Below, piece by piece: positions 4,996-7,387 of a stretch of DNA of 64,000 bases. The position numbers and the translations under genes were made by a program. This DNA is from Mobula hypostoma. Its lineage: Eukaryota. Each line of letters opens with the position of its first letter. The first letter of the stretch is position 1. The stretch lies in the NCBI RefSeq assembly GCF_963921235.1, contig NC_086097.1, positions 65,100,001 through 65,164,000 of the forward strand, in the 5' to 3' direction. The notes below the pieces were generated by a model, which saw nothing but the letters and a program-made list of their open reading frames with translations, ran no database searches and was not told where the DNA came from.

Positions 4996-6365
4996 CAATT
5001 CAAATTGGCTCCTTTACAGGAGAAATTATAAATTAAACACATAGAGGTTCGTCAACGAGATTAGAATGCGTTGATATTGGGGCTAATGTGCAAGGCAGGA
5101 TTGAGAACCAGTTAAGAGACTAAAAGCAAAAATTGGAATAAAATAGTTTTGGAGAGGAGGAGCTGTCAGGTTGTGAAATATTGAGGCGCAGTAGGAATCA
5201 GCTGTTCACTATCTATAACCAAAAAAGGACAAAATGTAATATTCCAAAGCTGGCTGATGATTTCAGCAGATAAGCTTGCTAAATCATTTTGTGTAAATGT
5301 CTGAAGTATCCTGCAGTGTTTCTTCTGGTGGTCTCTTTGATTTTTCACCCTTTGCATGCACAATATGCACAACCTCTAATGTGCTGCTTAAGCTTGTGGT
5401 ATATTTAAACAACATCGCATTCTGAAGCAATAACTCATCAGGGTATTTTTGCCTGAATTTATGTGGCAACAGGTTGATATTCATAAAGCTTTTCTTGGAC
5501 ATTTTCTTTGCAAGGTTCCTCCTCTCACTCTCAAATTTGGAGCAAATCTAACCGGCGTAACAATTATTAGGATTGTCCACTGAGAATATTTGTAATCAAA
5601 TTAATGCTTAAAGTCTTAAGCACTGATCTCACTTTTACAATAAAAAAAATAATACATATAGCCAGCAATGAAAACTTTGTGTGGCATAAAACAGGAAACA
5701 ATTTACTTTGAGCTTTATTGAGATATATGTTGCAGGAAATAGAGAGCAATTACATACATTAGCTGAAAATAATGGATTGTTAATAATGGAAATTGGAACT
5801 CAAAATAAATATGAAAATTCTCATACTACTCTTGAGCAATGAATGTCTCTTTCATCTTTACATTGATAAACAGATTTGCTGTGGAGTTCAGTATATAAAT
5901 AGTCTCTCACCTCTAATCAGTCCAAGATGTTGCATCATCATGGTGTTCAAGAGGGAGATGTTCACAAGCTGATGAAGTCGGAGTTCCTGTACATTTGGGG
6001 CCGGAGAGTGAAGGGGTGTGAAGCCTCAGATTTCAGCTCTCAGCTCTCATTCCTTAGACAACCCTTTCAGCAATACATCCCTCTTGTATAAACTTTGAGA
6101 ATTTTTAAAAATAGTTTTGTTTACACAACTGTAAAGATTTTTTTTCAGTAAAAATGAGACATCAGTGCACAGGCAACACATAATGAGCAATAACATTGCA
6201 GATCCAAGATTGTTTAAAGTCATTTCCTGTACAGAAGTGTAAAGGAGAAGGAAATAATTGTTACTTCGTATCCGTGCAGCACAAAAAAAACAATTAGATA
6301 AGGAGCACAATAATACTAACAAAAACACAATAAATTAAATACATAAGAGAGCATATATAAATACA

Positions 6366-6583
6366 TAAAAGTTGCTGGTGAACGCAGCAGGCCAGGCAGC
6401 ATCTCTAGGAAGAGGCACAGTCGACGTTTCAGGCCGAGACCCTTCGTCTAGTCCTGATGAAGGGTCTCGGCCTGAAACGTCGACTGTGCCTCTTCTTAGA
6501 GATGCTGCCTGGCCTGCTGCGTTCACCTGCAACTTTTATGTGTGTTGCTTGAATTTCCAGCATCTGCAGAATTCCTGTTGTTT
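6366..6583 (+). mobile_element. Non-autonomous Penelope-like (pLTR-derived) palindromic element with 15-bp TSD
   Basis: Inverted arms 6363-6448 and 6456-6541 (3 mismatches), 7-nt centre; flanked by GCATATATAAATACA at 6351-6365 and 6584-6598; arms related to the termini of the Penelope remnant at 44.6 kb. Confidence 0.8.
6449..6486 (+). ncRNA. Minimal type I hammerhead ribozyme motif
   Basis: Stem I TAGTC (6449-53)/GACTG (6482-86); core CTGATGA (6454-60); stem II AGG-GTCTCGG-CCT; GAAA (6474-77); loopless palindromic stem III ACGT; GTC cleavage triplet ending at 6481. Confidence 0.75.
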
Positions 6584-6750
6584 GCATATATAAATACAGT
6601 AGATTGATTGTATGTCTATAAAGTGATACTAAGCACAGGAGTGTCTGCACATAAGGTGACTGACAGGAAATGATAAAGTAGTGCTGGTTGGGGTGTGGAG
6701 GGGTGGGTTAGTGGTTGGAGGTGTTGATCAGTCTTACTGCTTGGGGTAAG

Positions 6751-7387
6751 TCCAAAAAACAAAAAAGTTGATTGTGAATTACAGGAGGAGTGGAGGCGGG
6801 TTTGGCCCGATCAATATCAATGGGTCTGCAGTTGAGAGGGCAAGTAGTTTCAAGTTCCTCGGTATACACATCACTGATGATCTTCCCTGGACTGTAAACA
6901 CTGGCTTTGTGACAAAAAAGCACCACAGCATCTCTAACACCTCAGGCGACTGAAGAAGTTCGGCATGGGCCCCCAAACCCTCAAGACCTTCTACAGGGGC
7001 ACCATTGAAAGCATCCTGACTGACTGTATCACCGCCTGGTACGGGAACTGTACCAACCTTGATTGCTGGGCACTGCAGAGAGTAGCACGGACAGCCGAGC
7101 GCATCTGTGGATGTGAACTTCCCTCCATTGAGAAGATTTATAGCAGCAGGCTCATAAAGAAGGCCTGGACACTAGTCACCCCAACCATAAACTGTTTCAG
7201 CTGCTTCTGTCTGACAAACGGTACCGCAGCATTAAATGTACAAGTTACGAGACAGCTTCTTTCTACAAGCCATTTGTCTTTTAAATTCACATAGCTCTAC
7301 ATTGTAATGGAGTCGTAACGCAAAGATTTTTACTTCCTCAAGTTGTGGGATGGATGTAAGATTTAAATAAATTATATTCTATTCTAA
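6751..7387 (+). mobile_element. Rex1/Babar-like LINE 3' part nested in the minus-strand host
   Basis: VERASSFKFLGIHITDDLPW and TFYRGTIESILTDCITAWYGNC motifs; (ATTCT)n tail at ~7376-7386. Confidence 0.75.

What the first reader, a model, noticed from the sequence alone, without database searches (positions are those of the whole stretch)
6351..6598. Hammerhead-ribozyme hairpin that appears to have mobilised as its own ~220-nt unit
Seen: two ~86-bp inverted arms with only 3 mismatches; a complete minimal hammerhead on the + strand (stem I UAGUC/GACUG, CUGAUGA, stem II AGG/CCU, GAAA, ACGU, GUC); a disrupted core on the - strand (CUAGACGA); no ORF; a 15-bp direct repeat GCATATATAAATACA on both sides, inside an older LINE. 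Known: Penelope-like elements carry minimal type I hammerheads in their pLTRs, whose loopless palindromic stem III is thought to need dimerisation. Inference: this is a non-autonomous, retrozyme-like Penelope parasite copied by target-primed reverse transcription. The long hairpin would compete with the ribozyme fold, so the RNA could switch between self-cleaving and dsRNA states.
Basis: partly seen in the sequence, partly recalled or inferred. Interest (0 to 1): 0.8.

Follow-up and report, generated by a model that had tools for sequence, protein, structure and literature searches.

The report
Fold-back scrap of a Penelope retrotransposon
This 218-bp hairpin is two inverted copies of the short terminal repeat of a very abundant Penelope-like jumping gene, most likely an abortive by-product of how that element integrates and not a small mobile element of its own.

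Summary
There are two 86-nt inverted arms (97% complementary), a 15-bp target-site duplication, and a minimal type I hammerhead motif on the + strand with a broken one on the - strand.

The right arm plus loop (6450-6583) is the complete 136-nt pseudo-LTR of a Penelope-like element (PLE). That PLE is a 3.65-kb unit with a 935-aa open frame carrying RT and GIY-YIG domains. It has more than 59,000 exact copies of its 3' junction in this 3.5-Gb genome. The left arm is the same pseudo-LTR inverted, without the 42-nt "tail".

Four further results argue that these copies arose separately:
- At least 3,786 fold-backs exist, with at least 36 centre types among 50 loci.
- Copies with the window's centre carry at least 10 PLE haplotypes, mirrored in both arms at 115 of 117 comparisons.
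- The loop lies in either orientation relative to the tail (9 versus 5).
- Exactly one arm carries the tail in 14 of 14 copies.

This matches published PLE biochemistry: both DNA strands are cut and extended, and there are two internal RT start sites.

As RNA the hairpin (-180 kcal/mol) excludes the ribozyme fold. Other notes of this scan report the same hairpins elsewhere in this genome. Verdict: an ordinary, probably dead-on-arrival PLE by-product.

The parts
6351..6365 (.). Left copy of the 15-bp target-site duplication (GCATATATAAATACA, 80% A+T)
   Evidence: exact direct repeat; other copies have their own 13-16 bp duplications, 68% A+T on average.
6366..6448 (-). Left arm: an inverted copy of the PLE pseudo-LTR. 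It lacks the 42-nt tail and the first 7 nt. Its outer end is a reverse-transcription start at the 'no-tail' site, not a 5' truncation. Bases 6363-6365 could belong to the arm or to the duplication.
   Evidence: 6 of 13 ordinary PLE copies end in the same zone (...GTGTGTTGC). PMC11167929 and PMC8557442 for the tail and the two start sites.
6449..6455 (+). Centre (loop) TAGTCCT. AGTCCT is the first six bases of the PLE unit (5' strand of hammerhead stem I plus C3 and U4 of the core). The preceding T is either copied from the 3' UTR or added without a template.
   Evidence: full-length copies L091 and L092 begin to align at AGTCC; the first loop base varies among copies, T most often, then A, G and C.
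6449..6486 (+). Minimal type I hammerhead motif of the PLE pseudo-LTR. Stem I is 6449-6453 with 6482-6486. CUGAUGA is at 6454-6460. The stem II region is 6461-6473, read as an unpaired A followed by GGG pairing with CCU. GAAA is at 6474-6477, followed by the loopless ACGU. The expected cut is after 6481.
   Evidence: sequence. PMC4209133 for the architecture of PLE minimal hammerheads; the core is conserved in a second PLE subfamily; no Rfam hit.
6450..6583 (+). Right arm plus tail: one complete pseudo-LTR of the PLE, from AGTCC to the end of the tail
   Evidence: the 136-nt terminal repeat of full-length copies is 99% identical between its two ends and collinear with this stretch..
6542..6583 (+). 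The 'tail', about 42 nt present on one arm only. In intact elements it is the first ~14 codons of the RT/EN open frame, so the insertion ends inside the ORF (internal initiation of reverse transcription).
   Evidence: exactly one tail in 14 of 14 fold-backs picked by centre, and in L045-L047 and L092. PMC11167929 and PMC8557442.
6584..6598 (.). Right copy of the 15-bp target-site duplication
6750..7376 (.). Unrelated older interspersed repeat (LINE 3' part), 150 bp to the right of the insertion. It is context only, not part of the element.
   Evidence: 84-88% identity to thousands of copies. ALKBH8_N hit in copy L086.

Best explanation
Window 6366-6583 is most likely a dead-on-arrival fold-back insertion made by a Penelope-like element (PLE) while integrating.

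Shown here:
- The PLE is a 3.65-kb unit with a 935-aa RT plus GIY-YIG open frame and a 136-nt pseudo-LTR.
- That pseudo-LTR begins at AGTCC, which is stem I of its minimal hammerhead. It ends either at a 'no-tail' site or 42 nt further on, inside the ORF.
- The window's right arm is one whole pseudo-LTR with tail. The left arm is the same sequence inverted, without tail.

Inferred, by analogy with the Anolis PLE studied in vitro (PMC11167929) and from the genomic patterns here:
1. The element's protein, probably a dimer on one RNA, cut both strands of an AT-rich target with a stagger of about 15 bp.
2. Each 3' end primed reverse transcription at one of the two adjacent internal start sites at the pseudo-LTR/ORF junction.
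3. Both cDNAs ran the roughly 90-135 nt to the 5' end of the RNA.
4. One cDNA reached AGUCC (plus one base). The other stopped 7 nt short and jumped onto the first cDNA, using it as template. This produced a head-to-head palindrome.

Snap-back of a single cDNA followed by trimming of one tail is a variant of this model that I cannot exclude.

The product keeps only 42 nt of the ORF sequence. If this PLE behaves like the Anolis element, whose protein needs ORF sequence downstream of the start sites, the product cannot be copied again.

The hammerhead is simply the PLE's own motif carried along. In a transcript of the hairpin it would be locked in a roughly 83-bp duplex.
For: Parent element:
- The stretch upstream of the right half continues into the PLE 3' UTR in other copies.
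- The parent junction 26-mer has 59,040 exact hits. The RT segment has 147,716 first-look candidates.
- Full-length copies L091 and L092 have a 935-aa open frame, hammerhead cores 3,513 nt apart, and a terminal repeat equal to window 6450-6583.
- GIY-YIG passes Pfam's cut-off in L043. Homologues carry PF00078 and PF01541.

Fresh formation rather than re-copying:
- 3,786 fold-backs have their centre within 30 nt upstream of the core. There are at least 36 centre types in 50 loci, and the window's type accounts for 1-2 of the 50.
- Independent fold-backs L045-L047 have unique centres, their own duplications and the same one-tail design.
- In 37 copies with the window's centre, the two arms carry the same allele at 115 of 117 comparisons over 4 non-CpG polymorphic sites. 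The copies fall into at least 10 haplotypes, which match the pool seen in 43 ordinary PLE ends.
- Tail variant CTCGTG travels with the same arm variant in fold-backs and in ordinary copies.
- The loop is in standard orientation relative to the tail in 9 copies and flipped in 5, each with its own duplication.
- Exactly one tail occurs in 14 of 14. Ordinary copies end at the no-tail zone in 6 of 13 and with tail in 7 of 13.

Published basis:
- Both strands are cut and extended, there are two adjacent internal RT start sites with the tail between them, and the template needs ORF sequence downstream of them (PMC11167929).
- An inverted 5'-truncated copy and a 30-40 bp tail at one end only are typical of PLEs (PMC8557442).
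- Pairs of minimal hammerheads on opposite strands 100-700 bp apart have been reported (PMC4209133).
Against: - The same 25-nt centre recurs 53 times exactly and 392 times with up to 2 mismatches. That is about 6 times more than an even spread over centre types would give. A compound centre (TCGTCAGGA + CCCTTCGTC + TAGTCCT) also recurs in 6 copies.
- I explain these recurrences by run-off at the RNA 5' end plus preferred jump points. That is inference, and some re-copying of fold-backs is not excluded.
- Another agent of this scan (s1-141886) read a similar hairpin as copied as a unit.
- The first 30 copies were picked by similarity to the window unit, which biases the haplotype sample. The 13 picked by centre alone are few.
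- The need for downstream ORF sequence is known only for the Anolis element.
- No RNA evidence could be obtained. The RNA-like runs are contigs that break at the palindrome centre.
Confidence: 0.75

Rival explanations
1. One reading: a non-autonomous hairpin element. A master copy is transcribed, and the whole ~220-nt RNA is reverse-transcribed in trans by the PLE enzyme, giving a family of its own.
For: - At least 40 full-length copies at 94-97% identity sit on many chromosomes.
- The centre is shared by 53 copies exactly and by 392 with up to 2 mismatches.
- Copies have their own duplications.
- Some copies have a shortened left arm, which could be 5' truncation (L055, L057, L059).
- A compound centre recurs in 6 copies.
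Against: - High identity merely reflects the youth of the parent PLE, whose copies are 96-98% alike.
- The copies carry at least 10 parent haplotypes, each mirrored in both arms. A single lineage would have to acquire the parent's polymorphisms twice over.
- The loop orientation is not linked to the tail (9 versus 5).
- The outer end of the left arm coincides with the no-tail end of ordinary copies, so it is a start site of reverse transcription and not an RNA 5' end.
- The unit lacks the ORF sequence that the Anolis enzyme needs downstream of the start sites (PMC11167929).
Confidence: 0.15
2. A retrozyme-like element: self-cleaving RNA units that circularise and spread, or an RNA that switches between a cleaving state and a dsRNA state.
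For: A hammerhead motif of PLE type is present. Vertebrate non-LTR retrozymes derive from PLE pseudo-LTRs (bioRxiv 10.64898/2026.07.22.740005).
Against: - Retrozymes are tandem direct repeats with a hammerhead in each unit. Here the repeat is inverted, only one core is intact, and nothing delimits a unit that could be excised.
- The hairpin fold is -180.1 kcal/mol against -121.0 with hammerhead stems I and II forced.
- The left arm is transcribed first, so it would capture the right arm as that emerges.
Confidence: 0.03
3. A miniature DNA transposon (MITE) with long terminal inverted repeats.
For: Long inverted arms and a flanking direct repeat.
Against: - The arms are not terminal: 42 nt of unpaired tail lie at one end only.
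- The duplication length varies from 9 to 16 bp between copies.
- The sequence is the end of a retroelement.
Confidence: 0.01
4. A local rearrangement: a longer head-to-head PLE pair was inserted here and later lost its middle by deletion of the palindrome centre.
For: Long head-to-head PLE pairs exist (L043, L092), and palindromes are unstable.
Against: A deletion would not give the same centre in hundreds of unrelated loci. It would also not place the centre at the element's own 5' end.
Confidence: 0.04

Closest known systems
Penelope-like elements of the Penelope/Poseidon type, with their 'inverted 5'-truncated copy plus one-sided 30-40 bp tail' insertion architecture (Evgen'ev and Arkhipova 2005 as cited in PMC8557442; Craig et al. 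2021, PMC8557442)
   Same: RT followed by a C-terminal GIY-YIG domain; a pseudo-LTR with a hammerhead; heavy 5' truncation; head-to-head inverted copies; a tail at one end only; target-site duplications.
   Different: This is the smallest form of that architecture. Both arms are no longer than one pseudo-LTR, so the whole insertion is a 218-bp hairpin with no coding sequence.
Poseidon element of Anolis carolinensis (PAc) studied in vitro (Frangieh et al. 2024, PMC11167929)
   Same: - The hammerhead lies just upstream of the ORF start.
- Insertions end a short way inside the ORF, at two adjacent zones separated by the tail.
- The target is AT-rich.
- The genomic fold-backs here are what extension from both cut strands would leave.
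   Different: - In PAc the start codon lies inside the hammerhead and RT starts at ORF positions 111-118. Here the start codon lies in the no-tail zone, about 85 nt after the core, and insertions end 0-45 nt into the ORF.
- Nothing was tested biochemically here.
Minimal dimer-type hammerheads of metazoan PLEs (Cervera and de la Pena 2014, PMC4209133)
   Same: Type I; helix I of 5 bp; an unpaired base at the 5' end of helix II; no helix III, only a palindromic ACGU. The paper also reports paired motifs on opposite strands 100-700 bp apart.
   Different: Helix II here is only 3-4 bp, against 7-8 bp in the Schistosoma families. Activity is untested. The motif on the opposite strand is broken by the way the centre was formed.
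Non-LTR retrozymes of animals (Cervera and de la Pena 2020, cited in PMC8557442; Li et al. 2026 preprint 10.64898/2026.07.22.740005)
   Same: Short, non-coding, derived from PLE pseudo-LTRs, and carrying the PLE hammerhead.
   Different: Retrozymes are tandem direct repeats that yield circular RNAs. This is a single inverted pair with one intact motif.

Membership tests
Penelope-like element (EN+ PLE), as the source of the sequence | Single ORF with a reverse transcriptase followed by a C-terminal GIY-YIG endonuclease | tested here: met
   - 935-aa open frame in L091 and L092.
- RVT_1 matches only weakly (E about 2e-4, below cut-off).
- GIY-YIG scores 25 bits against a cut-off of 22.6 in L043.
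- Homologues at 30-74% identity carry PF00078 and, in several cases, PF01541.
Penelope-like element (EN+ PLE), as the source of the sequence | Pseudo-LTRs (terminal direct repeat from partial tandem structure) that hold a hammerhead motif | tested here: met
   The 136-nt repeat at both ends of L091 and L092 is 99% identical, with hammerhead cores 3,513 nt apart.
Penelope-like element (EN+ PLE), as the source of the sequence | [quoted passage not shown] | tested here: met
   L043 and L092 are long head-to-head pairs. Ordinary copies end with a 42-nt tail in 7 of 13 cases and without it in 6 of 13. Fold-backs carry exactly one tail.
Hammerhead ribozyme, type I, minimal PLE variant | Core CUGANGA ... 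GAAA ... NUH with helices I and II in register | tested here: met
   Read directly from the sequence at 6449-6486. The core is also conserved in a second PLE subfamily whose flanks differ.
Hammerhead ribozyme, type I, minimal PLE variant | Match to a curated covariance model | tested here: not met
   No Rfam hammerhead model matches at gathering score or at E <= 10. Minimal PLE motifs lack helix III and needed a relaxed descriptor in PMC4209133.
Hammerhead ribozyme, type I, minimal PLE variant | Self-cleavage | not testable with these tools
   The RNA-like runs are contigs and show no molecule ends. Published PLE motifs cleave poorly, as dimers or with protein help (PMC4209133, PMC11167929).
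Non-autonomous retroelement (SINE-like parasite of the PLE) | Copies descend from hairpin masters: one lineage, distinct from the autonomous element, with the structure inherited as a whole | tested here: not met
   There are at least 10 parent haplotypes mirrored in both arms. Loop orientation is independent of the tail. There are dozens of other centre types.
Non-LTR retrozyme | Tandem direct repeats, each with an active hammerhead, that release unit-length RNA able to circularise | tested here: not met
   The arrangement is inverted, not direct, and the - strand core is broken.
MITE / DNA transposon | Terminal inverted repeats reaching both ends, and a duplication of fixed length | tested here: not met
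   A 42-nt unpaired tail lies at one end. Duplications range from 9 to 16 bp.

The most novel reading that the evidence does not exclude
The thousands of PLE fold-backs, this one included, could be more than debris in two ways. Some centre classes may be re-copied when read through from a neighbouring promoter. Alternatively, their transcripts may form roughly 83-bp perfect dsRNA that feeds small-RNA silencing of the very PLE that made them, so the element's integration chemistry would create its own brake. Nothing here excludes this, and nothing here supports it beyond the abundance and the predicted fold.
Probability: 0.12. Interest if true: 0.6.

Novelty: new member of a known kind. Interest (0 to 1): 0.25.

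Why it matters
For this locus, little: it is an ordinary, non-coding by-product of a known class of retrotransposon, lying in a gene-poor stretch.

The wider pattern is of some use. This genome holds thousands of natural fold-back insertions whose ends, centres and one-sided tails record in vivo what has so far been shown only in vitro for one lizard element. That includes cutting and extension of both strands, two adjacent internal start sites of reverse transcription, and run-off at the 5' end of the pseudo-LTR. A census of these fossils could test models of the still poorly understood PLE integration cycle.

It is also a caution for annotation. Many near-identical TSD-flanked copies with the same junction do not by themselves prove a self-propagating family.

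Tried and rejected
- Rfam scans gave no hammerhead hit. The strong scores to MIR9408, mir-789 and mir-5681 are generic long-hairpin matches below their gathering scores, and I rejected them.
- RNA evidence: only Logan contigs of runs guessed to be RNA were available. Thousands of contigs match the arms, but none bridges the palindrome centre and no molecule ends can be read. This says nothing on expression or cleavage of the hairpin.
- A 5'-end profile by pattern was confounded. The pattern mostly picked up a second PLE subfamily (upstream TTCC, core CUGAUGA), so I dropped it.
- I considered that the centre marks the hammerhead cleavage site. It does not: the cut would be 32 nt further on. A separate small class of 97 fold-backs does centre on GTC|GAC. 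Because GTCGAC is itself a palindrome, micro-homology explains it as well as cleavage does.
- I considered a transcription start at the TCAGTT just upstream (initiator-like). Rejected, because the arms do not include those bases.
- Pfam on ORFs directly flanking the insertion found nothing.
- Complex prediction, structure prediction and fold searches were not used, because no claim here depends on them.

Full report
OBSERVATION

One search reports inverted arms 6363-6448 and 6456-6541 (86 nt, 97% complementary, 7 nt between them). It also reports an exact 15-bp direct repeat at 6351-6365 and 6584-6598.

The + strand carries a minimal type I hammerhead pattern:
- UAGUC at 6449-6453, pairing with GACUG at 6482-6486
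- CUGAUGA at 6454-6460
- GAAA at 6474-6477
- a loopless ACGU
- an expected cut after C6481

The - strand reads CUAGACGA and has no stem I partner.

No Rfam hammerhead model matches, even at E <= 10. The only scores are generic long-hairpin matches to miRNA models, below their thresholds. So the ribozyme rests on pattern and on the literature for minimal PLE hammerheads (PMC4209133), not on a curated model.

WHAT THE SEQUENCE IS

A search of the window's own genome (3.48 Gb) with 6366-6583 gives full-length matches of 94-97% identity on many chromosomes.

Other copies of the right half continue upstream into a different, shared sequence. That sequence is itself very abundant, with copies 96-98% alike. 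It runs back through ORFs with a GIY-YIG endonuclease domain (above Pfam's cut-off) and a weak reverse-transcriptase match.

Two full-length copies (L091, L092) show the whole element:
- a 3,649-nt unit
- a 935-aa open frame
- hammerhead cores 3,513 nt apart
- a 136-nt terminal repeat, 99% identical between its two ends

Homologues in the protein database carry RT and GIY-YIG domains. The nearest named ones are bamboo-shark proteins at 69-74% identity. This is a canonical endonuclease-bearing Penelope-like element (PLE).

Its copy number is huge. The 26-nt junction between the 3' UTR and the terminal repeat occurs 59,040 times exactly. The RT segment has 147,716 first-look candidates.

The terminal repeat (pseudo-LTR) begins at AGTCC, the 5' strand of hammerhead stem I. 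It ends in the first codons of the ORF. It is collinear with window 6450-6583. So the right arm plus loop of the finding is one complete pseudo-LTR, and the left arm is the same thing inverted.

THE TWO KINDS OF END

Thirteen ordinary PLE copies taken by position split into two groups. Six end in a zone around ...GTGTGTTGC. Seven end about 42 nt further on, at ...CCTGTTGTTT(GCGTTT).

In intact copies the start codon lies in the first zone (allele GTATGTTGC), and the 42 nt are the first ~14 codons. Insertions therefore end inside the ORF.

This is the PLE 'tail' described from genomes (PMC8557442). In vitro, for the Anolis element PAc, it was explained by reverse transcription starting at two adjacent internal sites of an RNA that runs on further (PMC11167929). 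The same paper shows three other things:
- The enzyme cuts and extends both DNA strands.
- It is predicted to be a dimer.
- Its template needs ORF sequence downstream of the start sites.

In the window, the right arm has the tail (6542-6583). The outer end of the left arm lies at the no-tail zone. That end is therefore a start point of reverse transcription on the opposite strand, not a 5' truncation.

IS IT A MOBILE UNIT OF ITS OWN?

The 25-nt centre occurs 53 times exactly and 392 times with up to 2 mismatches, against none for the reversed control. The copies have their own duplications, mostly 13-16 bp and 68% A+T.

Five further results point the other way.

1. Fold-backs are a mass phenomenon with very varied centres. 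A gapped pattern finds 3,786 head-to-head pairs whose centre lies within 30 nt upstream of the core. In the first 50 loci there are at least 36 different centres. The commonest type (two bases, CT) makes up 7 of 50, and the window's type 1-2 of 50. Another 542 have the centre inside the ribozyme body, and 97 at GTC|GAC. Three fold-backs with unique centres (L045-L047) have the same design and their own duplications.

2. Copies with the window's centre are not one lineage. I scored four non-CpG polymorphic sites in 37 such copies. The two arms agree in 115 of 117 scorable comparisons. Yet the copies fall into at least 10 haplotypes, the same ones and in similar proportions as in 43 ordinary PLE ends. 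A tail variant (CTCGTG) is linked to the same arm variant in fold-backs and in ordinary copies. A hairpin lineage would have to acquire each of the parent's polymorphisms in both arms.

3. Among copies chosen by centre alone, the asymmetric loop is in the parental orientation relative to the tail-bearing arm in 9 and in the opposite orientation in 5. Each has a clean duplication. An RNA copied from its tail would keep one orientation.

4. Exactly one arm has the tail in 14 of 14 copies. Ordinary copies use the two ends about equally. This speaks for one coupled event at two adjacent sites.

5. The unit keeps only 42 nt of ORF. If the PAc rule holds, its transcript lacks what the enzyme needs.

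MECHANISM PROPOSED

Steps 1-4 are inferred from the patterns above and from PMC11167929.

1. A PLE protein dimer on one RNA cuts both strands of an AT-rich site, about 15 bp apart.
2. The two 3' ends prime at the two adjacent start sites of the pseudo-LTR/ORF junction.
3. Both cDNAs copy the same short stretch up to the 5' end of the RNA.
4. One cDNA then uses the other as template.

Use of one RNA explains the mirrored arms. One start at each site explains the single tail. Either cDNA may be the longer one, which explains the two loop orientations.

The window's centre is then run-off at the element's own 5' end (AGUCC). The one further base varies among copies, T most often, then A, G and C, as non-templated addition would give. 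It is joined to a partner that stopped 7 nt earlier.

Other frequent centres fit short homologies. Examples are GAC for the CT type, and the palindromes CTAG, ACGT and GTCGAC.

Snap-back of one cDNA with later trimming of one tail is an alternative I cannot exclude. It would have to explain the flipped copies.

THE HAMMERHEAD

The motif fits published PLE minimal hammerheads: helix I of 5 bp, an unpaired base before helix II, and a palindromic ACGU in place of helix III, so that two molecules must pair (PMC4209133). Helix II is short here.

The core is conserved in a second, otherwise diverged PLE subfamily.

The T at 6458 that gives CUGAUGA is present in one arm only and lies in a CpG. Most copies have C there. 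It is most likely a change after insertion, at a core position where any base is allowed.

As RNA, the 218-nt unit folds into a hairpin of -180.1 kcal/mol. Forcing hammerhead stems I and II costs about 59 kcal/mol. The left arm is also made first. A switch between a cleaving and a dsRNA state is therefore not credible. In PAc the ribozyme was not needed for insertion (PMC11167929).

COMPARISON AND NOVELTY

Every feature has been described for PLEs: an inverted 5'-truncated partner, a one-sided tail, a hammerhead in the pseudo-LTR, and paired motifs on opposite strands.

The item is the smallest form of that architecture in a genome where the element is extremely abundant. It is a new member of a known kind.

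It is not a retrozyme, because there is no tandem repeat and only one intact motif. It is not a MITE, because of the unpaired tail and the variable duplication length.

Several first-stage notes of this scan report the same hairpins elsewhere in this genome. One follow-up (s1-141886) judged its hairpin the usual by-product in shape but 'copied as a unit many times'. My tests on this centre class argue against re-copying as the main source, without excluding it.

LIMITS

- The haplotype sample is small and partly biased.
- The recurrence of the simple centre and of a compound centre is explained only by inference.
- The RNA-like runs available are contigs that break at the palindrome.
- No biochemical step was tested.
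- The claim 'inside an older LINE' is only partly borne out. An old LINE tail begins at 6750, and the DNA directly beside the insertion was not identified.

Noticed in passing
G000 genome-wide; examples L091 (C76:21264200-21273200) and L092 (C2:158927800-158936800): The parent Penelope-like element is extremely abundant: 59,040 exact hits of one 26-mer and 147,716 first-look RT candidates. Copies with an uninterrupted 935-aa open frame still exist, so the family may be active or only recently silent.
   Followed up: partly
genome-wide, e.g. G000:C1:10834974-10835003: 97 fold-backs have their centre at the predicted hammerhead cleavage site. About 36 of the 50 listed are perfect palindromes at GTC|GAC. 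They could be fossils of self-cleaved RNA templates, or could result from the GTCGAC palindrome acting as micro-homology.
   Followed up: partly
L052, L056, L060, L062 (two copies), L064: A compound centre (inverted arm up to TCCTGACGA, then 9 nt CCCTTCGTC, then TAGTCCT and the direct arm) recurs in at least 6 insertions with different duplications and different haplotypes. A two-step template jump that repeats this exactly is unexplained.
   Followed up: partly
L004:1920-2025: A solo pseudo-LTR insertion without tail starts exactly at TAGTCC. It is preceded by TTGT, possibly a few bases copied from another template's end, and is flanked by the 13-bp duplication TTTAAATATAGCC. This shows that pseudo-LTR-only cDNAs are also inserted singly.
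   Followed up: no
L079-L084 (C1, several places): A second abundant PLE subfamily shares the hammerhead block from AGUCC onward, with U at core position 7 and C instead of U at the outer stem I pair, but differs upstream and downstream. It could be used for a covariation test of the motif.
   Followed up: partly
L091 and L092 (flipped strand, about 2191-2202 and 2209-2220): The start codon of the 935-aa frame is created by the A allele of a polymorphic site (GTATGTTGC) in the no-tail zone. The commoner G allele (GTGTGTTGC, as in the window) lacks this ATG.
   Followed up: no
window 6750-7376: Old interspersed repeat (84-88% identity to thousands of copies). A better copy (L086) has an ORF with an ALKBH8_N/DUF1891-type domain, as found in LINE ORF2 tails.
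   Followed up: partly
window 1-64000: The hairpin is the only PLE-derived sequence in the 64-kb window, although the genome averages about 17 exact junction 26-mers per Mb. Another note of the scan places PAX9 and NKX2-8 here, so the region may be kept poor in transposons.
   Followed up: no
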